64,000 nucleotides of DNA from Octopus sinensis (Eukaryota), in NCBI RefSeq assembly GCF_006345805.1, contig NC_043017.1, positions 11,284,001 to 11,348,000 of the forward strand. The letters run 5' to 3'. Both the position numbers and the translations under genes were made by a program. The notes under the pieces are model-generated. The model was not told the DNA's origin. It saw only the letters and a program-made list of their open reading frames with translations, and did not search any database. The first letter of the stretch is position 1. Every line of letters begins with the position of its first letter. Of the stretch, positions 2,961 through 62,486 are shown one piece after another.

Positions 2961-3124
2961 GCTGTGTTATCTTCATTTAACTTCCTTCCTGATGATTTAA
3001 TCTCTGACAACTCAGTCATTGATTTGGAAGATACAGAAGTCCCGACCCTTAACAGAAAAACTCCACCCTTCTTAGATAGCCCAGTAAAGGAAAAAACACC
3101 AGTTTCTTCACCGACATCACCAGA
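2961..3124 (+). CDS. PKN: PKN internal exon (linker)
   Basis: tttcctacag acceptor and gtatgt donor. AVLSSFNFLPDDLISDNSVIDLEDTEVPTLNRKTPPFLDSPVKEKTPVSSPTSP ends in phase 2 (ga), which matches the leading t of the next exon (GAT, Asp). Confidence 0.8.
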
Positions 3125-4515: not shown

Positions 4516-4588
4516 TTACAACCATCAAGAAGTTAAAATGTCACAGTTTAGGCCGATAAGTGTACTTGGACGAGGCCACTTTGGTAAA
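4516..4588 (+). CDS. PKN: PKN exon: start of kinase domain, Gly-rich loop
   Basis: ttcttcag / gtaagt. YNHQEVKMSQFRPISVLGRGHFGK carries the GRGHFGK loop typical of PKN. Confidence 0.95.
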
Positions 4589-5369: not shown

Positions 5370-6180
<811 letters not shown>

Positions 6181-6777: not shown

Positions 6778-6957
6778 TCAAACTACTACAATATTTATTA
6801 AACCTTGGCCCTCCTGTGTTGTCTTTTGGTTTTTGTTTTTATTAATTGCCATTCACAATAAATAAATACTTATACTTATATAAATACTTATATGTTGTCT
6901 TTGCTATATTCGTCAGTTGATGCCTACTTAAACGTAGTTATTCTCTTACTTCTTTAG

Positions 6958-7110
<153 letters not shown>

Positions 7111-7337
7111 TAAATTCAGAAACGTCACTTTACCTGTCTTGTTTTCTTGTTCTTTGTTTTCCTTCTTTTTTAAAAATGAATTTGAAATATTTTTTTCTTT
7201 GACACATGTATAATATAAGTACTGTTCCAAGACCTAACATGGATGTTAGATGTGATGATGGATGATGATGATGATGTGTGAGTGTGTGCGTGCATGTGGA
7301 CACTCTTGTCTTGATATCGTGGCATCATCATCATTTA

Positions 7338-7752
7338 ATTATTATAAAATTATTAACCATCTTACAAACAATAACTCTGAGCACCTTTTCAAACTCCACC
7401 TGTCTAACACCCGTGGACATGTTTACAAAGTCAGAAAACAGCACAGCTCCCATGACTTTCAGAAACATTTTTTCACGCTAAGAGTTGCTGAAGCATGGAA
7501 CAAACTGCCGGCATCAGATGTTAGTTGTCGGAGCACTGCATCCTTCAAAACTTCCATGCTTCCTGAGATTCGCCAACACTACACCTGATTTTCTCCCTTC
7601 CATACACATGCAAGCATGTATCTGACTCATACATTGTTCGCTTTCCAGACATTTGTACATTACTGCATATGCTTTATATGCACTTTTTGACAAGTTGCGG
7701 TGCACCTGAGCACTGTATACAATAATTTCATTATTATTATTATTATTATTTA
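7338..7752 (+). mobile_element. CR1-type LINE 3' end
   Basis: YYKIINHL...NTRGHVYKV...KHFFTLRVAEAWNKLP matches the CR1/L2 ORF2 C-terminal pattern (TRGH, FF..RV...WN.LP); 3' UTR ends in (ATT)n. Confidence 0.8.
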
Positions 7753-8134: not shown

Positions 8135-8500
<366 letters not shown>

Positions 8501-10087: not shown

Positions 10088-10500
10088 AGGTGTGGCTGTG
10101 TGGTAAGTAGCTTGCTTATGAACCACATAGTTCCTTGTTCAGTCCCACTGCGTGGCACCCTGGGCAAGTGTCTTCTACTATAGCCTCGGGCCAACCAAAG
10201 CCTTGTAAGTGGATTTGGTAGACGGAAACTGAAAGAAGCTCGTCGTATATATGTGTGTGTGTATGTATGTATATATATATATATATATGCATGTGTTTGT
10301 GTGTCTGTGTTTGTCCCCACCTACATCGCTTTACAACCGATGCTGGTGTGTTTACGTCCCCGTTACTTAGCGGTTCGGCAAAAGAGAACCGATAGAATAA
10401 GTACTAGGCTTCCAAAGAATAAGTCCTGGGGTCGATTTGTTCGACTAAAGGCGGTGCCCCAGCATGGCCGCAGTCAAATGACTGAAACAAGTAAAAGAGT
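10088..10500 (+). mobile_element. Family A SINE, near full length
   Basis: Same head, core and tail as 5736-6180 and 57733-58144. Confidence 0.85.
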
Positions 10501-11058
10501 ATATATACATGTTGGTGATATTTTACAAAGAAATTAGTCTATGCAGAAGTTACCTCCCTTGGCCTATTATAATTTTTTTTAAAAATAATCTTTGCTGAGA
10601 ACGTCAAAACATTTTTTATGTGCGTGCTACAAACTTGAATGTCATCATATTAATGTTTGCTTTATGTTTATTTTTAAAGAAAACAAAAAGATTTGTTTTT
10701 AAGCTTTTATTTTCCAGGTTTAAGTATTTTTTTCACATTCCACATTGTCAAAACTTCGGGATTTCATGTGTATTTTTTTTTTTATCCAAAATGGAAAAGC
10801 TGGTCAAATTCATTTATAGATATACAATGAAGAAGAAAAACATGTTAAATTTTATATACATATTAGTTTATAACATTTTATAGAACATTTTTAATTATCA
10901 TTTTTATTATAATTAATTATTATCATGATCATTATTTATTTATTTATTTTTTTTTTTTGGCTTGCATGAAGTTTCATAATGTAGTTTTAGTCACTAAGTA
11001 ACAAAGACATCGTTTGGCTCCTTATTTCTTCTTCTTCTGTAGTAAAACTACTAAAACA

Positions 11059-16137: not shown

Positions 16138-16889
16138 GTGTATCTTTTCTCTTTTACTCATTTCTGTCATTGGACTGTGGTCATGCTGGGGCACCGTCCC
16201 GAATTTTTTTAGTCACCCACATCGATCCCAATGCTTATTTATTTTTAGCTAGGTGCTTATTCTTTCGCCAAATCACTATATTACTGGGACCAGTTGTCAA
16301 GCAGTGTGGGGAACAGACATCCGCATGTGCACACACATACACACACACAATCAGCTTCTTTCATTTTCCAGCTACCAAATCCACTCCCAAGGCTTTGGTC
16401 AGCCTGAGGTTATAGCAGAAGACACATGCCTAAGATGCCATGCAGTGGGATTGAACGTAGAACCATGAGGCTTGGAAGCAAGCTTCTTACCGCACAGCCA
16501 TGTCTGTGTCTTAATATTGTGTTTTTTAATGCAATATATTTATAAAGGGATTTTTTTTTCTTGGACGGAAAAGCTTCAGCTTCCGGCTTTTCAACAATAC
16601 ATCTATGTTACGTCTGTCTTCCTGATAAAGATTTTTATAATCCTTAGCAATTTGGAGCAGAAAAGAAACAACAAGCTCGCTGGAGGATACGTGTAACTTC
16701 ATGGACACCTATGTTACCTAATTAGTTGGTGTAATTCCTGTTGCTCTTCTCCATCTCAAATTGGTGCTAATTAAATAATATCTGATCTAAATTAGATTAA
16801 AAATCTCAGTAGTTAATTTGCCAATTAATAACTCTGTTGCGTTATTAGTGTTTATTTTTTCTTTTCATTTCCAGTAATTTCCATTTCAG

Positions 16890-17402
16890 CCACCCATCCA
16901 CAGGAACGAAGCGAAATTGTTTAAAGCAATCCTCCGACGTAAGGGGTATCTAAGTCCATCTCGGAATACTCGTCTCGACACACCCTCACCATTCCAAACT
17001 AAATGCCCAATGACTGCCATTCCCTTACCTAGCAACAAGAACCCCATGCATTTCAACCACACCAACACCAAAACAACAACAACTACATCAACAACACTGA
17101 CCATGACAAAAGCACGTGCCAAAAGGCAGGCGAGAATGTCAGCCCCGACAGTCCCCGTCGCTCAGTGCAAAAACACTGCCGATCTTCGAGTTGGCGTACA
17201 AAAAAATCAGTGTAATGTTCCCAAGGAGACGTGTCCCACCGTTCCTTGTAACAGCTCGGAAGCCAGCGAGAGCGATCCACAAGCATGCCCCGCCGACAGC
17301 AATACTGACGGGCAGGAAGTACAGCAGTCTATCGTAGACAAAAAGAATGCTAAAAACTTAAAGTTGCAACTTCCACATAGTAAGGTCTGTAATGAATGTT
17401 AA
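16890..17402 (+). CDS. Candidate alternative terminal exon of PKN (170 aa + TAA)
   Basis: Pyrimidine-rich acceptor ccatttcag ends at 16889. The frame starts PPIHRNEAKLFKAILRRK, is in phase 0 with exon 8206-8425 and stays open to TAA 17400-17402. GC is clearly above the flanks, and AATAAA lies at 17765-17770. No transcript evidence. Confidence 0.6.
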   Translation, partial: PPIHRNEAKLFKAILRRKGYLSPSRNTRLDTPSPFQTKCPMTAIPLPSNKNPMHFNHTNTKTTTTTSTTLTMTKARAKRQARMSAPTVPVAQCKNTADLRVGVQKNQCNVPKETCPTVPCNSSEASESDPQACPADSNTDGQEVQQSIVDKKNAKNLKLQLPHSKVCNEC

Positions 17403-17851
17403 AGAATGAAGCAGAAATAATCATAATAATAATAATAATAATAACAACAACCACAATGACAATAACAACCACAACCAAAACCAGACAACAACAAAAAAAA
17501 ACAAACAAGCAATGGAAGGTTTGATAAATTTGGATAATGGAGACAGATATTAGATTATTCTAAAGTTTTCAATTTCTTCTCGTCTTAGAAGACAAAATAT
17601 TTTTTTGTCCTCAATATCGATAACTTCACTATGTTTCAGTTGGTTTTGATCTCTAATCATCATCAAATGTTTTATTCTCCAAGTTTGAATGCAGCCTCTG
17701 AAGTTGTTATTTCTAACTAAGGATTGTGGTGTACTTGTATCAGTAACCTTTCTCTTAGTTTGGAAATAAAGGTTTATAATTGAAATTCCGTCTGGGACCA
17801 TCATACATACACACACACATATATCTATGTGTGTGTTTATATATATATATA

Positions 17852-18008
17852 TATAAACAACTTATAAATAAGGTCAAATGAAAAAATTTCTAATGCCAAA
17901 TATGCTGAATATGCCATATAATCATATGGTAATAGACAATATGTCCAATTTTCGGCATATTTGGCATTAGAAATTTTTTTGTTTGCCCTTATTTATAAGT
18001 TGTTTATA
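17852..18008. repeat. Inverted repeat: 58-bp arms, 41-nt spacer
   Basis: 17852-17909 is the reverse complement of 17951-18008 with 4 mismatches. Confidence 0.85.
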
Positions 18009-23612: not shown

Positions 23613-24204
23613 AGCTAGCAGAATCGTTAGCACGCCGGGCGGAATGCGTAGCTGTATTTCGTCTGCCGTTACGTTCTGAGTTCAAATTCCGCCGAGGTCG
23701 ACTTTGCCTTTCATCCTTTCGGGGTCGATTAAATAAGTACCAGTTACGCACTGGGGTCGATATAATCTACTTAATCCATTTGTCTGTCCTTGTTTGTCCT
23801 CTCTGTGTTTAGCCCCTTGTGGGTAGTAAAGAAATAGGTATTTCGTCTACCGCTACGTTCTGAGTTCAAATTCCGCCGAGGTCGACTTTGCCTTTCATCC
23901 TTTCGGGGTCGATTAAATAAGTACCAGTTACGCACTGGGGTCGATATAATCTACTTAATCCATTTGTCTGTCCTTGTTTGTCCTCTCTGTGTTTAGCCCC
24001 TTGTGGGTAGTAAAGAAATAGGTATTTCATCTACCGCTACGTTCTGAGTTCAAATTCCGCCGAGGTCGACTTTGCCTTTCATCCTTTCGGGGTCGATTAA
24101 ATAAGTACCAGTTATGCACTGGGGTCGATATAATCTACTTAATCCATTTGTCTGTCCTTGTTTGTCCTCTCTGAATTTAGCCCCTTGTGAGTAGTAAAGA
24201 AATA
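23613..24204 (+). mobile_element. Family C SINE, head-to-tail trimer (184-bp unit)
   Basis: One head (AGCTAGCAGAATCGTTAGCACGCCGGG), then units starting at 23654, 23838 and 24022, each ending TAAAGAAATA. Confidence 0.9.
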
Positions 24205-25098
24205 TATATTTATTTTCTATGAAAGTTGCTTTCTCTGGGTTTTTTAAAGGTGTGCGAAATAATAGTATGAATTTTGAATTGGAAAGTTTATATTGAATTC
24301 TTTCTTGTTCCTTGAGGTTCCGTTTAGAAATTTTCTTTGTTTGCTTTTGGTTTTTCTTATTCCTTCCCACTTCTTGTTTTGGTTTTTTTTTTTTTTGTTC
24401 CTTTTTTTTCCATTTGAAAAGAAAATAATAAACAAATATATAAAGGGCAGCTGAACCTGAGAATGAGAGACACTTTTTAACCTTTGTTCTGCTATTTTCC
24501 TTAAAACGATTTGGCTTTTGTTTTCTAACAAAATGTTAATTATTACCACCACTAATGAATACCTTCTGAAGTGAAAGCCTTTCTTAAGTTATTTTCCACC
24601 TTGAAATATCCACAACGGAAACCTTACGCACAAAACATATCGATACTCATTTCGTTTCCGGCATCCTTCGTTCTGTTATGATTCATTCTAAACAAAGGGT
24701 GCCATAGAACAGGAAGCAAGTTCTTGATAAGCCAAGTCCTCGGTATTGTTTCAATTCTTGGCTGAAGCTGTTTTCAGACTAAATGTCATCTAAGGGGCCA
24801 CCCATCTATATAAGGTTGAAACAAACCCTGTAACTTCTTGTTTCATCCTCCCTTCAAAACCATCTCGATACAAACCTGCCTGACATTGCATGTGCTAAGG
24901 TGTTTGTGTTTCAATTAAAATCTAAAACTAAAGCTAATGACACTTGCTTCTGATAGGGCTTACAGAGGTGGTGCCTGGGGGCTCTACCCCTACAACCCTT
25001 CCTCCAGGAATAGTGGGCTGAGAGAATGGATGGATGAATAGATGGATCAAAAGCTTGTTGTGATAAAAACGATTGCTTTGAGATTGCAATTACTGTAT

Positions 25099-28521: not shown

Positions 28522-28848
<327 letters not shown>

Positions 28849-29423: not shown

Positions 29424-29765
<342 letters not shown>

Positions 29766-30116: not shown

Positions 30117-30176
30117 AATATTGATTGGGATGCATTACTCATGAAGAGAACAAGACCTCCGTTTACACCTACAGTG
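30117..30176 (+). CDS. PKN: PKN exon: start of AGC C-tail
   Basis: ttttcag / gtcagt. NIDWDALLMKRTRPPFTPTV contains the PPFxP motif. Confidence 0.95.
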
Positions 30177-31237: not shown

Positions 31238-31381
<144 letters not shown>

Positions 31382-35314: not shown

Positions 35315-35898
35315 ATACCTATTTCTTTACTACCCACAAGGAGCTAAACACAGAGACGACAAACGGATTAAGTCGATTATATTGACCCCAGTGCGTGACT
35401 GGTACTTAATTTATCGACCCTGAAAGGATGAAAGTCGACCTCAGCGGAATTTGAACTCAGAACGTAACAGCAGACAAGATACCCATTTCTTTACTACCCA
35501 CAAGGGGCTAAACACAGAGGAGACAAACATGAACAGACAAATGGATTAAGTCGATTACATCGACCCCAGTGCGTAACTGGTACTTAATTTATCGACCCCG
35601 AAAGGATGAAAGGCAAAGTCGACCTCAGCGGAATTTGAACTCAGAACGTAACAGCAGACAAAATACCCATTTCTTTACTACCCACAAGGGGCTAAACACA
35701 GAGGAGACAAACATGAACAGACAAACGGATTAAGTCGATTACATCGACCCCAGTGCGTAACTGGTACTTAATTTATCGACCCCGAAAGGATGAAAGGCAA
35801 AGTCGACCTCAGTGGAATTTGAACTCAGAACCTAAAAGCAGACGAAATACCACTAAGCATTTCGCCCAGCGTGCTAACGTTTCTGCCAGCTCGCCGCC
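35315..35898 (-). mobile_element. Family C SINE trimer (reverse orientation)
   Basis: One full head at the 35898 end and three tandem units; two are 184 bp apart, the third has small deletions. Confidence 0.88.
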
Positions 35899-43925: not shown

Positions 43926-44784
43926 TGCAGTTCTCATGTGTTTGCTGAAAGCGATTTTGTTTCTCCTCCATTGAAATGTGTTTTTGCGGTAAAAGCGTTT
44001 CATGTGAGAAGTTTTCTTTATATTTAAAGCTTTTACAGAACTGACTGAGAGAATTGATTAAATCTGTTGTGGCAACACACTTGTTATTTTACTGATGTCA
44101 GATAAAAAGGAGCAGATTGATATCTCTGTAAAATGTGTGTGTGCGTGTATGTGTATATATATGTGTGTGTGTGTGATGCTGTAGGTTAGTTTTGCGTGTT
44201 CAACATTAAATGGATGCAATACGATATGGTCTGAGAATCAGTGACCAAACAGCTTATCAGCTCGCTATCACCATCACCTCCTCCCCCTCCATCATATCCA
44301 CAAATCTCCCATTGCTCCCCCTCCCCCACGACTGTCACCTCCCCCTCCTCTCCCCACCCCGTCCACTCCTTCCATCTCTTTAACCATCTCAACTCTCGCC
44401 GCCAGTTAAAGAAGCAGCGTAGATTTGGTCTTTTGTAATAAGCATTACAGCAAATAGCAACAATGATGTCGTCATTCCGGGTTGGCTTTTGCTTCCAAGA
44501 TGTGGTCCCGATTGTATCTGGAGGTCACTTTAACTGATGCTCGGTCACTTTGCTTGGATGAGAGGCTTGCAGGGATCTGGAAGCTGAAGGGTCTGGGTGC
44601 TGCAGGGTCAACACCAGCCGTGGCTCTCCCTGTGCCTCACTGGTGTCGCTTGTCATGTGTTCACAGAGGTTGTATGTGAATGAGTTAAAAACACCTTGTG
44701 ACCATTTGCACATGGTTTATTTATGCTGCGCAAGTCCTGGCCGGTCACTGCTGGCTGGAATTACAAACTATTTACAGAGGACTA

Positions 44785-45140
44785 ACTTACTTACTTGTAC
44801 TTGTGGCGACATTCACCCTGGGCGTGTTGAGTCGGCTTCTTCTACCACCCTTGAAGCATCTCGAACCATGGCAGTGGAAGAAGTTTCGTGGGAATATGAA
44901 TTTCACAAGTGGTCCCCAACAATCCCGCATGTAGAGACATCCTGTTTGCCGCAGATTGTCTGCAGGTGCAGGGACAGAATGACCGAGGAGCTGCCAGTTG
45001 CCGAAACAGACACTCTGAGGATTTTCACCAGAGCCCTGTCTGCCGGGTTGTGGCCCTCGGTGTCAGACCACTCGATGTTAGACCAATCTGCCTTGGGTGG
45101 CCCTACCAGGAACCGAAGTTCCCGACGGCATAGCTCTGAC
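44785..45140 (-). mobile_element. Probable internally deleted RTE-type element
   Basis: The minus strand starts GAGCTATGCCG...CTGGTAGGGCCACCCAAGGCAG, which I recall as RTE 5'-UTR-like, and ends ...CAAGTACAAGTAAGTAAG. GC-rich, no RT motifs. Confidence 0.4.
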
Positions 45141-45354
45141 ACAACAAAATGTAAGAAATATAAAGCAATGTGTTATGTAGCTGGATATCAAAACTTGCCC
45201 CTGGCAATGGAACAAGCACAAGAATATACAGAGATCTGCCCTCATGAACCCCTGTCAAACATGCTGTCATTAAAATGGAATGTGAGTGTTGGGTTAGGAG
45301 CTTGCAGTTGCTAAAATGACACACGACCTATTTATGTTATTGTGTAAAAAAAAA

Positions 45355-46204: not shown

Positions 46205-46785
46205 TTGAATGTGGCCTCATTACTCCACACAATCTTTGTTGGAAAGTGTGCATCTTCTACACATCATGCCACGTACCACTCACAATACTGCACTCTTTGG
46301 TCTGGATCATCATTAATAGCATGGATTAATCTTGGAACGTAACTTTTCCATTGACAACACTTCAAAATGCCTTGGAAAGACGATTTCGAAATACCTGCCT
46401 CATGACTCGCTTGCTGCATAGATTTTCTTGGACATTGGTGATACGTTTCCAGCACTCCTTCTTGCTTTGTGGGGGTAGTCAAGGTTCTTGATTTTCCCGG
46501 ATGTTTCTTGTGGACATTCTGAACAGTCCCATTGACTGCAAGCTTATCTCTAATTCGAATGATGGTAAATCGCATTGGTGGATCTGTTTGAAACTCTGTC
46601 CTAAACTGTCTTTTGCACTTCAACTGCATTTTTACACTTCCAGTAATATTTCAGAATGAATTTCCTTTCTTCAAAGCTTAGTTTGACTGCCATCATTAAT
46701 TCCAATGGGTTTCATCTGGAAAGAAAAAACATCAATTGTGTTATTTGCTGCTAAAGTGTGTATACATTTTTGAGGGACACCATAT
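46205..46785 (-). mobile_element. Tc1/mariner-type transposon 5' fragment (DUF4817-like HTH)
   Basis: [23 protein letters not shown]...[18 protein letters not shown]...[25 protein letters not shown]; a TIR-like TGGTGTCCCTCAAAAATGTATACAC near 46780. Confidence 0.75.
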
Positions 46786-52329: not shown

Positions 52330-52737
52330 GAGCTGGCAGAAACGTTAGCACACCGGGCGAAATGCTTAGCGGTATTGCGTCTGTCGTTGCGTTCTGAGTT
52401 CAAATTCCGCCGAGGTCGACTTTGCCTTTCATCATTTCGGGGTCGATAAATTAAGTACCAGATACGCACTGGGGTCGATGTAAACGACTTAATCCGTTTG
52501 TCTATCCTTGTTTGTCCCCTCTGTGTTTAGCCCCTTGTGGTTAGTAAAGAAATGGGTATTTCGTCTGTCGTTACATTCTGAGTTGAAGTTCCACCGAGGT
52601 TGACTTTGCCTTTCATCCTTTCGGGGTCGATAAATTAAGTACCAGATACGCACTGGGGTCGATGTAAACGACTTAATCCGTTTGTCTATCCTTGTTTGTC
52701 CCCTCTATGTTTAGCCCCTCGTGGGCAATAAAGAAAC
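52330..52737 (+). mobile_element. Family C SINE dimer nested in the (GAT)n tail of a family B element
   Basis: (GAT)n on both sides (52312-52330 and 52739-52760); one head and two tandem units. Confidence 0.85.
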
Positions 52738-53307
52738 AGATGATGATGATGATGATGATGTTTATGTGATCAGATATATAATTTCAAAGTGTTCGTGGTT
52801 TCATAGTGTGGATCTGATCAAAGAGGTTTGAACTCACAGCTTCACGGTTTCAAAGCAAACTTCATAAGCCACCGCCCCACTGCCCCACCCCCCACAACAC
52901 TAAAAATATATCTAAAAATAATCTTTGCTCTCTGCTAGGTGGATGTCGTATGTGGCTGAGGGCATGCTGATGTTGCTGTTGCTGTTGTTGTTGCTGGTGG
53001 TGGTGGTTATGGCAGGGAAGTGGGGGGGGGGGAGGTGGAGACAGTTTAAGTAGCCGACACTTCTATCTCATTGGCTTATTATTGTGATGATGTAACGAAA
53101 GGTTTTGTTTGGTCATCTAAGGACCTCCGTGTGTCCGGGTTTAATTGGAGAGGAAGGAGAGGGGGAGAAGGGAAGGTGAGAGAAAGAGAGAGAGAGAGAG
53201 GAAGTGAGAGAGGGGCTACTTTAATTAGGGTGGTGTCTTGAAAGTAAACAAAAAAATTAAATTACATTATTTCAAAATCAAGAAATAAATATAAGTATAT
53301 ACATAAG

Positions 53308-56179: not shown

Positions 56180-56530
56180 TTAAACATCATCTCCTTCAAA
56201 ATAGTAACCTTGCACAGCAAAGCACCAATTCCAGTGTGGCTGCCACTTTTGGAATCTGACCCGGAAGTCATTTTCCATAAGTGAGTTGAGAACCTTTTGC
56301 AATTCATGCTTGGTCTCAACAACAGCGTTAAAATGCTGACTTTTGAGCCAGATTTTCATCTTGGGGAAGAGATGGAATTCTGCTGGTGCTGAATTTGGCA
56401 AATAGGACAGGTGCAGAAGTGATGCCATGTTGTTTTTGGTGAGAAACTCATGAATTACGAGAGATTGGTGACAGGGTACATTGTCGTCATGAAGAATCCA
56501 ATTCTTCATGCTTCACAGACCCAGTTGCTT
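56180..56530 (-). mobile_element. mariner transposase C-terminal fragment
   Basis: WILHDDNVPCH...YLPNSAPAEFHLFPKMK...QKWQPHWNWCFAVQGYYFEGD shows decayed HDNA.PH, YSPDLAP.DF.LF and G.YFE motifs. Confidence 0.85.
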
Positions 56531-57732: not shown

Positions 57733-58144
57733 AGTGGCTGTGTGGTAAGTAGCTTGCTAACCAACCACATGCTTCCGGGTTCAGTCCCACTGCGTGGCAA
57801 CTTGGGCAAGTGTCTTCTGCTATAGCCCCAGGCCGACCAATGCCTTGTGAGTGGATTTGGTAGACGGAAACTGAAAGAAGCCTGTCGTATATATGTGTAT
57901 ATATATAAGTGTGTGTGTATATGTTTGTGTGTCTGTGTTTGTACCCCTAGCATTGCTTGACAATCGATGCTGGTGTGTTTACGTCCCCGTCACTTAGCGG
58001 TTCGGCAAAAGAGACCGATAGAATAAGTACTGGGCTTACAAAGTATAAGTCCCGGGGTCGATTTGCTTGACTAAAGGCGGTGCTCCAGCATGGCCACAGT
58101 CAAATGACTGAAACAAGTAAAAGAGTAAAAGAGTAAAAGAGAGT
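57733..58144 (+). mobile_element. Family A SINE inserted into a longer piggyBac-like MITE
   Basis: The MITE-like sequence before 57733 resumes after 58144 and ends GGTAACGAAAGGGTTAA at about 58198. Confidence 0.8.
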
Positions 58145-61511: not shown

Positions 61512-62214
61512 GTAAGTATTGTGACATGATTCCAGTGTAAATATCCATAGCCTGAGGAAGCTGTCCATGTGCAAAAAGGGTTGCCAAGCTGCTGTTGCCG
61601 CCGCCGCCAACTATCCGTTTCTTCTCACCTGTCAGTTTGATTAAGAACAGGTATTCCTTATTAGCAATTGGTGCAAATTATTGAACACACTAATTTATTG
61701 GAGGAGAATAACCCATGAGGTACCCACTTCCCTTCTCTATAAACTTTTCTAATATGTTTGAGATGATCTTGCACAATGGACCAAAATTTATTTCGCTCCC
61801 AGGATACTTTGACATTTAATTCTCTTCAATTACAATTTGCTTCAAATTTCATTACATTTTTGTATCTCTAATCCATACATACAATTGTACGTATACACAC
61901 ACATACATGTATGAGTGTATGTATAGGGCCGTTTCATCATGTTGAACTTTTAACCCCTACACATTTTTGTCTTTTCTCCATTTTTTTCAGTCTCTTTCCT
62001 TTTTTCCCTCTCAGTCCTTTCTGCTGAAGAGCATAGGCTCAAAACATCAAAGACATTTCCGTTTTTCCCAAACACCAAACTAATACACCTGCTTGTTGTT
62101 CCCTCGCCACTCTTCATCTTTTGTTTTCTCTAAATTTAAACTATATACATGTGTGTGTGTGTGTGTGTATATATATTTATACAAACCTCAATATGAATGT
62201 AATTTCTCTTCCAG

Positions 62215-62397
62215 AAAAATGTTCTGTAGTTTCCATACCCAATGGCATCATTACATCAAACAGTTCCTCGACCGAACCAATCTCACACAAGACCTACATT
62301 TACATAAAATGTTCGCCGGGTTTTCTTTTAGATGGAACAAGTTCTCTGTTTTGTAACTTTGGTAAATGGTCCTCAGAAATACCTTCCTGTGTTCCAA
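62215..62397 (+). CDS. Sushi/CCP domain exon 2 (gene continues beyond the window)
   Basis: ctcttccag / gtaagt, phase 1-1. KCSVVSIPNG...IKCSPGFLLDGTSSLFCNFGKWSSEIPSCVP has the CCP Cys/Trp pattern. Confidence 0.92.
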
Positions 62398-62486
62398 GTA
62401 AGTTGTCCATGTTTTTGTTTCATTTCTAAAAATTAATGTCTTTATTTCTAAAAGAAAAAGAAAAAACAGAAATTTTTTTACACATA

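What the first reader, a model, noticed from the sequence alone, without database searches (positions are those of the whole stretch)
16875..17770. Candidate alternative last exon giving a C-terminally replaced, probably inactive PKN isoform
Seen: a 513-nt GC-enriched open frame directly after a good acceptor (16889), in phase with the preceding exon, with its own stop and AATAAA (17765). Its first residues, PPIHRN-EAKLFKAIL, align by eye with the canonical next exon [16 protein letters not shown] (xP....E..[LV]F..I[LV]), which suggests a diverged duplicated exon. Established: the skipped exons encode helices G-I, the subdomain XI Arg (KRLG) that pairs with the APE Glu, and the AGC tail (NFD, turn and hydrophobic motifs). 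Inference: the isoform would keep any upstream Rho-binding and C2 regions (outside this window) but lose catalytic competence, and might act as a scaffold or dominant negative. A nearby acceptor at 16874 would give an immediate TAA in the same frame.
Basis: partly seen in the sequence, partly recalled or inferred. Interest (0 to 1): 0.78.

Follow-up and report, generated by a model that had tools for sequence, protein, structure and literature searches.

The report
Unproven extra last exon in PKN
Inside a 20-kb intron of a protein kinase N gene lies an exon-like open reading frame that, if spliced in, would cut the kinase short and inactivate it. The sequence alone cannot show whether it is ever used, and it looks only weakly like coding DNA.

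Summary
After ag 16888-16889 a 170-codon frame (16890-17399) runs to TAA 17400-17402. It is in phase with the exon ending LVGE at 8425, has GC 0.48, and AATAAA lies at 17765.

Evidence for a real exon:
- The frame is unlikely given local composition (P about 0.0015).
- It is single-copy in the window, and its CpG o/e of 0.86 is as high as in true exons.
- When anchored at the junction, its first 16 residues fit the PKN alpha-G segment better than about 99.8% of controls.

Evidence against a coding exon:
- Once stop codons are ignored, there is no frame-specific codon usage.
- The sequence is low-complexity, and AlphaFold2 predicts mostly disorder.
- Residues 18-170 resemble nothing.
- The stronger acceptor (16874) gives an immediate TAA.
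- About 0.6 frames of this length are expected by chance per window.
- The annelid orthologous intron has no counterpart.

Transcripts and close relatives are absent from every database I could reach, so usage and conservation are untested.

Best guess (0.4): a lineage-specific, truncating alternative 3' exon, possibly descended from the alpha-G exon. Any inclusion ends PKN after helix alpha-F, which would leave it kinase-dead. The main rival (0.35) is a chance open frame or pseudoexon. Interest is modest.

The parts
8206..8425 (+). Constitutive PKN exon (RDLKLDN...DFG...APE...[16 protein letters not shown]). It ends on a complete codon before gtatgg.
   Evidence: Pfam Pkinase
16854..16889 (+). 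Pyrimidine-rich tract carrying two tandem acceptor AGs (16873-16874 and 16888-16889). A possible branch site is TTCAT, with its A at 16867.
   Evidence: The branch site was read by eye and is an inference.
16875..16877 (+). TAA, read at once if the stronger acceptor 16874 is used. The product would then end at ...LVGE.
16890..17402 (+). Candidate terminal exon coding part: 170 codons plus TAA. GC 0.478, CpG o/e 0.86, rich in T/P/K/N/S.
16890..16937 (+). First 16 codons, PPIHRNEAKLFKAILR. HMMER aligns them to [17 protein letters not shown], the alpha-G segment of the canonical next exon.
   Evidence: AlphaFold2 predicts a helix at residues 5-17
16939..16944 (+). Donor-like GTAAGG. It would define a 49-nt (or 64-nt) cassette that shifts the frame and stops in the next exon (LSIPWG*).
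   Evidence: the translation of the shifted frame is
17054..17096 (+). CAA-type low-complexity stretch inside the frame (the TTTTTSTT run).
17416..17508 (+). AAT/AAC microsatellite and an A9 run starting 14 nt after the stop. It could be a retroposon-like tail. It is also a likely source of oligo(dT) internal-priming artefacts.
17765..17770 (+). AATAAA, 363 nt after the stop. A TG-rich run follows at about 17826-17838.
28726..28833 (+). Canonical next exon ([16 protein letters not shown]...IMRR), which the isoform would skip.
29469..29549 (+). Canonical exon with KRLG (subdomain XI), skipped.
30117..30176 (+). Canonical exon NIDWDALLMKRTRPPFTPTV, skipped.
31238..31381 (+). Canonical last exon (NFD, turn motif LTPS, hydrophobic motif FQDFSF, stop), skipped.

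Best explanation
The segment is a lineage-specific alternative 3'-terminal exon in the greatly expanded intron between the alpha-F exon and the alpha-G exon of a PKN gene.

How it would work (inference): in a minority of transcripts the exon ending at 8425 is spliced to 16890, or to 16875, instead of 28726, and the RNA is cleaved after AATAAA 17765.

What the sequence shows: either acceptor ends the reading frame after helix alpha-F. With 16875 the stop comes at once. With 16890 it comes after 170 extra residues.

What follows from established kinase structure: the product lacks helices alpha-G to alpha-I, the subdomain XI arginine and the whole AGC tail, so it cannot be an active kinase. The stop lies in the last exon, so the mRNA would escape nonsense-mediated decay.

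Further inferences:
- The first 16 residues probably descend from a duplicate of the alpha-G exon.
- The remaining roughly 150 residues are a young, disordered tail, not a domain.
- The main effect would be truncation, meaning less active PKN and possibly an HR1/C2-bearing kinase-dead fragment, and not a new function of the tail.
For: - The open frame is unlikely given its own composition (0.15% of shuffles), and it is the longest AG-initiated frame in the 20.3-kb intron.
- It starts within 15 nt of one of the best pyrimidine tracts in the intron (top 0.5%).
- The first 16 residues add +9.4 bits to Pfam Pkinase, against +0.2 to +3.8 for 7 shuffles.
- They add +9.0 bits to a PKN profile built without this sequence. 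Only 5/5000 shuffles, 8/5000 random open peptides and 1/240 other AG-initiated intron peptides reach that.
- CpG o/e is 0.86, against 0.45 for the window and 0.70 for the true exons.
- There is no second copy in the window and no transposon or other domain.
- The host gene model is complete and the intron position is conserved in an annelid.
- A stop, an AATAAA and a TG-rich run are all present.
Against: - No transcript or cross-species evidence of any kind exists.
- With stops ignored, codon usage in frame 0 is no better than in the other frames (-0.09; 93% of random intron stretches do as well; true exons average +0.15).
- Three-base periodicity is weak (p = 0.06).
- The sequence is low-complexity. 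AlphaFold2 gives mean pLDDT 53.8 and pTM 0.18.
- Residues 18-170 resemble nothing.
- The stronger acceptor gives an immediate stop, and 16889 has an AG 15 nt upstream.
- About 0.6 open frames of this length are expected per window.
- Acceptor-donor pairs are common in this intron.
- Unanchored searches do not see the alpha-G similarity.
- The annelid orthologous intron (0.7 kb) has no counterpart.
Confidence: 0.4

Rival explanations
1. A chance open frame in an A+C-rich, partly microsatellite-derived intronic block that happens to follow a pyrimidine tract. It is a pseudoexon that is never, or only accidentally, spliced. The alpha-G resemblance is a coincidence.
For: - Composition-preserving shuffles give about 0.6 frames of >=170 codons per window.
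- T is only 18% of the block, which lowers the stop frequency.
- CAA, AAT and AAC repeats lie in and next to the frame.
- There is no frame-specific codon usage, and the product is predicted to be disordered.
- Roughly a dozen acceptor-donor pairs occur in the same intron.
- The similarity is short and was noticed after the fact. Unanchored p = 0.03; at the DNA level p = 0.008-0.03.
Against: The joint occurrence is improbable if the parts are independent:
- an open frame with about a 0.01 chance at this spot;
- a top-0.5% pyrimidine tract at its start;
- an anchored similarity of p about 0.001-0.002;
- an exon-level CpG o/e.
Confidence: 0.35
2. The 3' end of a 5'-truncated non-LTR retrotransposon, or of a retrocopy of a lineage-specific gene, inserted in the sense orientation. 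The frame would be a leftover of the element's own coding sequence, and the AAT/AAC/A9 run its tail.
For: - An A-rich microsatellite tail starts 14 nt after the stop.
- There is a strong A+C strand bias.
- High CpG o/e is also seen in the young repeats of this window.
- The databases lack close relatives of this organism, so a lineage-specific element would go unseen.
Against: - There is no reverse transcriptase, endonuclease or any other domain.
- No hit was found among 1.84 billion representative proteins.
- There is no second copy in 64 kb, although SINEs and other repeats recur there.
- No convincing target-site duplication was found.
- This reading does not explain the alpha-G-like start in phase with the PKN frame.
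Confidence: 0.12
3. A short poison cassette exon, 16890-16938 (49 nt) or 16875-16938 (64 nt), using the donor-like GTAAGG at 16939. Inclusion shifts the frame and stops in the next exon (or at once), giving nonsense-mediated decay. The long frame beyond 16939 would be intron.
For: - Acceptors and GAC|GTAAGG lie at exon-like spacing.
- The alpha-G-like stretch ends exactly at this donor.
- Both possible lengths are 1 mod 3.
Against: - GTRAG occurs 1.2 times per kb, and such acceptor-donor pairs are common in the intron.
- This reading leaves the 170-codon frame and the CpG-rich block unexplained.
- There are no transcripts.
Confidence: 0.08
4. An independent single-exon gene nested in the intron. 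It would be translated from the in-frame ATG at 17010 (131 aa) and have its own promoter.
For: An open frame with an internal ATG and a CpG-rich block.
Against: - No homologue was found anywhere.
- There is no domain and the product is predicted to be disordered.
- There is no coding-type codon usage.
- The frame starts at a splice acceptor, not at an ATG.
Confidence: 0.03

Closest known systems
Intronic polyadenylation / alternative last exon isoforms that truncate kinases, such as TrkB.T1 and soluble decoy receptor tyrosine kinases (from my own knowledge of the literature, not tested here)
   Same: An exon inside an intron has its own acceptor, stop and poly(A) signal. It replaces the C-terminal catalytic part with an unrelated tail, and the product keeps the N-terminal binding modules but has no activity.
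   Different: Here the cut falls inside the kinase C-lobe, after alpha-F, and not before the kinase domain. The remnant is therefore likely to misfold. No transcript evidence exists. The tail is unusually long (170 aa) and low in complexity.
Tandem exon duplication giving mutually exclusive exons
   Same: The candidate lies in the intron just upstream of the exon it resembles. It starts in the same phase, with a PP...E..LF..IL pattern that fits the alpha-G segment.
   Different: The similarity covers only 16 residues. The 108-nt length and the donor are not kept. The rest of the exon is unrelated. Inclusion ends the protein instead of swapping a segment.
Pseudoexons and poison exons in long introns
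   Same: Consensus-quality splice signals lie deep in a 20-kb intron, and inclusion gives premature termination.
   Different: Pseudoexons do not normally carry a 170-codon open frame, an exon-level CpG content, or a resemblance to the neighbouring exon.
PKN transcripts that retain the last intron in other animals (P0092 and P0108 from Logan assemblies)
   Same: These are C-terminally altered PKN products that lose the NFD, turn and hydrophobic motifs.
   Different: They diverge after ...PPFVPTI, one intron from the end, and keep the whole kinase core. None of the 120 listed homologues diverges after LVGE.

Membership tests
PKN/PRK subfamily of AGC kinases (host gene) | Protein kinase domain followed by the AGC C-terminal domain | tested here: met
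   Pfam Pkinase positions 4-257 of 263 (220 bits) and Pkinase_C 1-44 of 44 (57 bits).
PKN/PRK subfamily of AGC kinases (host gene) | Closest homologues are PKN proteins | tested here: met
   488 hits at E <= 1e-100. Nearly all hits that carry a descriptive name are serine/threonine-protein kinase N, N1 or N2, at 65-83% identity.
PKN/PRK subfamily of AGC kinases (host gene) | N-terminal HR1 repeats and a C2-like domain | not testable with these tools
   These would lie upstream of the window. Only two linker exons (890-1044, 2961-3124) and the kinase exons are present.
PKN/PRK subfamily of AGC kinases (host gene) | Hydrophobic motif with an acidic residue (F..FDY) | tested here: not met
   Here the motif is [11 protein letters not shown]; the family consensus is F.DFDY.ADWC. 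This is a variant within the family and does not argue against membership.
Alternative last exon / intronic polyadenylation isoform | Usable 3' splice site | tested here: inconclusive
   The pyrimidine tract is in the top 0.5% (16874) or top 5% (16889) of intron AGs. The two AGs compete, and the stronger one gives an immediate stop. Signals only; usage was not shown.
Alternative last exon / intronic polyadenylation isoform | Open frame in phase with the upstream exon, ending in its own stop | tested here: met
Alternative last exon / intronic polyadenylation isoform | Poly(A) signal and cleavage region | tested here: inconclusive
   AATAAA is at 17765 with a TG-rich run downstream. The hexamer occurs 0.94 times per kb by chance.
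Alternative last exon / intronic polyadenylation isoform | Junction-spanning and polyadenylated transcripts | not testable with these tools
   No transcript data for this organism could be reached. No protein with this tail was found in the collections.
Alternative last exon / intronic polyadenylation isoform | Frame conserved in related species | not testable with these tools
   The databases lack close relatives. The only orthologous intron fetched, from the annelid Ridgeia (0.7 kb), has no counterpart.
Tandemly duplicated exon | Significant sequence similarity to the neighbouring exon | tested here: inconclusive
   Anchored gain is +9.0 to +9.4 bits, p about 0.001-0.002. Unanchored it is 0.8 bits, p = 0.03. 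At the DNA level p = 0.008-0.03. BLAST does not find it.
Tandemly duplicated exon | Same length and phase as the partner exon, with similarity along the whole exon | tested here: not met
   There is no donor at 108 nt. Donor-like sites lie at 49 and 490 nt, and both shift the frame. Residues 18 onward are unrelated.
Transposable element or retrocopy | Several copies | tested here: inconclusive
   There is no other copy in the 64-kb window. The whole genome was not available.
Transposable element or retrocopy | Element-type protein domain or homologue | tested here: not met
   No Pfam family passed threshold. No hit was found in 5.8 billion or 1.84 billion proteins.
Transposable element or retrocopy | Terminal structures (target-site duplication, A-rich tail) | tested here: inconclusive
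   An A-rich AAT/AAC/A9 tail is present at 17416-17508. Only chance-level 9-nt direct repeats flank the block.

The most novel reading that the evidence does not exclude
A duplicate of the alpha-G exon was captured as an alternative terminal exon in this lineage. It would give a stable, regulated kinase-dead PKN that keeps the Rho-binding HR1 and C2 modules, an alpha-G-like helix and a new cysteine-bearing disordered tail. This product would act as a natural dominant-negative or scaffold in Rho signalling. It would also be a caught-in-the-act case of a mutually exclusive exon turning into a truncating last exon.
Probability: 0.1. Interest if true: 0.55.

Novelty: new member of a known kind. 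Interest (0 to 1): 0.3.

Why it matters
If the exon is used, the gene would make a kinase-dead PKN from the same promoter. Rho-PKN signalling could then be tuned by a splicing or polyadenylation choice, with no change in transcription.

It would also show how the very long introns of this genome can turn a duplicated exon plus former intron sequence into a new protein tail.

If it is not used, it is a useful warning. In an AT-rich genome with A+C-rich low-complexity islands, a long open frame behind a good acceptor appears by chance about once every window or two.

Tried and rejected
1. Homology of the 170 aa. I tried a word-indexed search of 5.8 billion proteins, full phmmer against 1.84 billion representatives, Pfam and a metagenome scan, and none found anything. 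These negatives rule out a known domain, a known transposon protein or a conserved nested gene. They say nothing about close relatives, which the databases lack.
2. Retrocopy of the whole PKN C-terminus. Rejected, because residues 18-170 score no better than shuffles against a PKN C-terminal profile.
3. Duplication of the linker exon. This was suggested by a shared PPIH. I found only compositional matches.
4. Other PKN exon copies in the window. None were found.
5. A known RNA family. Nothing passed a gathering threshold in the window, and near the segment there were only sub-threshold miRNA-like hits.
6. Target-site duplications or terminal inverted repeats around the block. Only chance-level short repeats turned up.
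7. Codon-usage test. My first version looked frame-specific only because stop codons were penalised. With stops ignored the signal vanished. An earlier run used a wrong exon coordinate and should be disregarded.
8. Literature searches for truncated PKN isoforms and for octopus long-read isoform data gave nothing usable for this gene.
9. Species identification. The closest protein comes from an unnamed Logan assembly. 'Cephalopod' remains my inference from the repeat content.

Full report
**Setting.** The window carries the 3' part of a protein kinase N (PKN) gene on the + strand. I rebuilt the reading frame from ten exons: 890-1044, 2961-3124, 4516-4588, 5535-5714, 6958-7109, 8206-8425, 28726-28833, 29469-29549, 30117-30176 and 31238-31381.
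- All ten exons have ag/gt borders, and together they give an uninterrupted kinase domain plus AGC tail.
- Pfam finds Pkinase (positions 4-257 of 263) and Pkinase_C.
- The nearest proteins are PKNs of other animals, at up to 83% identity.
- The exon 8206-8425 ends ...LVGE on a complete codon. The next canonical exon ([16 protein letters not shown]...) starts 20.3 kb later.
- The same intron, in the same phase, exists in the annelid Ridgeia, where it is only 0.7 kb long.
That is my inference, since no tool named the organism.

- After ag 16888-16889 the frame CCA CCC ATC... stays open for 170 codons, to TAA 17400-17402.
- A second ag at 16873-16874 is followed at once by TAA.
- AATAAA lies at 17765.
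- The block has GC 0.478, against 0.38 for the window. Its CpG o/e is 0.86, against 0.45 for the window and 0.70 for the true exons.

**Is the frame more than chance?** The evidence is split.
- Given its own dinucleotide content, the 513 nt are open for >=170 codons in only 0.15% of shuffles.
- It is the longest frame starting at any AG of the intron. The next longest run 117-121 codons.
- Shuffling the whole window in 600-nt blocks still gives about 0.6 such frames per window. That is about 0.05 for the sense strand of this intron and about 0.01 at this spot.
- The block is T-poor (18%) and partly made of CAA repeats. An AAT/AAC/A9 run begins 14 nt after the stop.

**Splice and 3'-end signals.**
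- The pyrimidine tract in front of 16874 is as good as those of the true exons. Its pyrimidine fraction is 0.90, in the top 0.5% of 1085 intron AGs.
- The AG that opens the long frame scores 0.75 and has the other AG 15 nt upstream.
- If the upstream AG is used, the protein ends at LVGE and the long frame is 3' UTR.
- A branch point at A16867 (TTCAT) would be too close to 16874 and would favour 16889. This is my inference by eye.
- Donor-like GTAAGG sites at 16939 and 17380 would make internal exons of 49 or 490 nt. Both shift the frame.
- Acceptor-donor pairs of this quality occur at about a dozen places in the intron, and AATAAA occurs 0.94 times per kb. The signals therefore permit an exon but do not prove one.

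**The 'diverged duplicated exon' idea.**
- Ordinary searches see nothing. BLASTP of the tail against the canonical C-terminus gives E = 0.47 at best, and at a different place. TBLASTN of the kinase against the window does not find the segment.
- An unanchored profile of the canonical exon gives 0.8 bits (p = 0.03).
- The right test fixes the alignment at the exon junction, and there the result is unusual. Adding the native 24 residues to a kinase truncated at LVGE raises the Pfam Pkinase score from 194.6 to 204.0 bits. Seven shuffled versions reach only 194.8-198.4.
- I built a PKN profile from 74 homologues, leaving out this window's own sequence. The gain is +9.0 bits. Only 5 of 5000 shuffles, 8 of 5000 random stop-free peptides from the window, and 1 of 240 other AG-initiated intron peptides reach it.
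- AlphaFold2 puts its only helix on residues 5-17.
- At the DNA level the anchored similarity is weaker (p = 0.008-0.03).
- The similarity stops after 16 residues, exactly at the donor-like site at 16939. Residues 18-170 are no closer to the PKN C-terminus than shuffles.
- My reading is that descent from a duplicate of the alpha-G exon is plausible, at roughly even odds after allowing for post-hoc choice, but it is not shown.

**Does the tail look like coding sequence?** No.
- Three-base periodicity is weak (p = 0.06).
- A codon-usage log-odds trained on the gene's own 444 codons seems to favour frame 0 only while stops are scored.
- With stops ignored, frame 0 is worse than the other frames (-0.09). 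93% of random intron stretches do as well, and true exons average +0.15. The test has low power.
- The peptide is rich in T, P, K, N and S. AlphaFold2 predicts it as mostly disordered, with mean pLDDT 53.8 and pTM 0.18.
- It has no Pfam family above threshold, and no relative among 5.8 billion or 1.84 billion proteins or in metagenome contigs.
- These negatives exclude a known domain, a recognisable transposon protein or a conserved nested gene.
- They do not bear on conservation among close relatives. The same databases return nothing above 83% identity for the conserved kinase and nothing at all for the lineage-specific linker exons.

**Consequence if spliced in.** Either acceptor ends PKN after helix alpha-F.
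- The Pfam kinase match stops at profile position 212 of 263, and Pkinase_C is lost.
- From established kinase structure, what goes is helices alpha-G to alpha-I, the subdomain XI arginine that pairs with the APE glutamate, and the NFD, turn and hydrophobic motifs. These are all encoded by the skipped exons. Activity would be lost, and the C-lobe remnant would probably be unstable.
- A scaffold or dominant-negative role through the N-terminal Rho-binding part is conjecture, and that part lies outside the window.

**Verdict.**
- I put about 0.4 on a real, lineage-specific truncating 3' exon, possibly born from the alpha-G exon.
- About 0.35 goes to a chance frame or pseudoexon.
- About 0.12 goes to a relic of a retroelement or retrocopy. 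The A-rich tail speaks for this. The lack of copies, domains and target-site duplications speaks against it.
- The rest goes to a short poison cassette or a nested gene.
- None of the 120 listed PKN homologues diverges after LVGE. Two transcripts from other animals instead read through the last intron.
- The annelid intron holds no alpha-G-like extra exon. If the exon is real, it is young.
- The kind of thing is well known, and the case is unproven, so interest is modest.

Noticed in passing
window 17852-18008: A near-perfect 157-nt hairpin with 61-nt arms that are 92% complementary. RNA minimum free energy is -82.8 kcal/mol, z-score -17.4. It lies about 90 nt downstream of the AATAAA. Rfam gives only sub-threshold miRNA-like matches (mir-450, 35.4 bits against a gathering score of 60). 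There is no other copy in the window. It could be a foldback/MITE or a hairpin-RNA locus.
   Followed up: partly
window 31355-31378: The hydrophobic motif of this PKN reads [11 protein letters not shown], where 75 homologues have the consensus F.DFDY.ADWC. A phosphorylatable Ser replaces the usual phosphomimetic Asp.
   Followed up: no
window 16331-16511 (- strand) and at least 10 other places, e.g. 5744-6180, 10092-10507, 57734-58133: A tRNA-derived SINE family (GGTTCAGTCCCACTGC... core) is scattered through the window in both orientations. One copy lies 380 nt upstream of the candidate exon.
   Followed up: no
window 23613-24280, 52331-52814, and inverted at 35431-35891: A repeat family with a 184-nt tandem unit. 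Copies are about 90% identical, and CpG o/e is above 1, the highest in the window. It is probably a young element or satellite.
   Followed up: no
window 56180-56509 (-) and 46264-46629 (-): Open frames that look by eye like pieces of a mariner/Tc1-type transposase (...HDDNVPCH... and ...[13 protein letters not shown]...). I did not run them against any library.
   Followed up: no
window 62121-62429 (+): An open frame containing a Sushi/CCP-like pattern (CSPGF...C.FGKWS...PSC). It may be an exon of a neighbouring gene downstream of PKN.
   Followed up: no
window 44562-45311 (+): The longest open frame of the window: 250 codons, GC 0.50, no Pfam family above threshold. I did not examine it further.
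   Followed up: partly
proteins P0092 and P0108 (Logan transcripts of other animals): These PKN products read through the last intron (...PPFVPTI|VSGERR..., ...PPFIPTI|VSSSFTNRT). They lack the NFD, turn and hydrophobic motifs. This may be a recurrent retained-intron form of PKN.
   Followed up: no
L002 (Ridgeia piscesae JAODUO010000114.1) 6818-7519: The intron between LVGE and SPFPG is at the same position and phase in this annelid, but it is 0.7 kb long against 20.3 kb here.
   Followed up: yes
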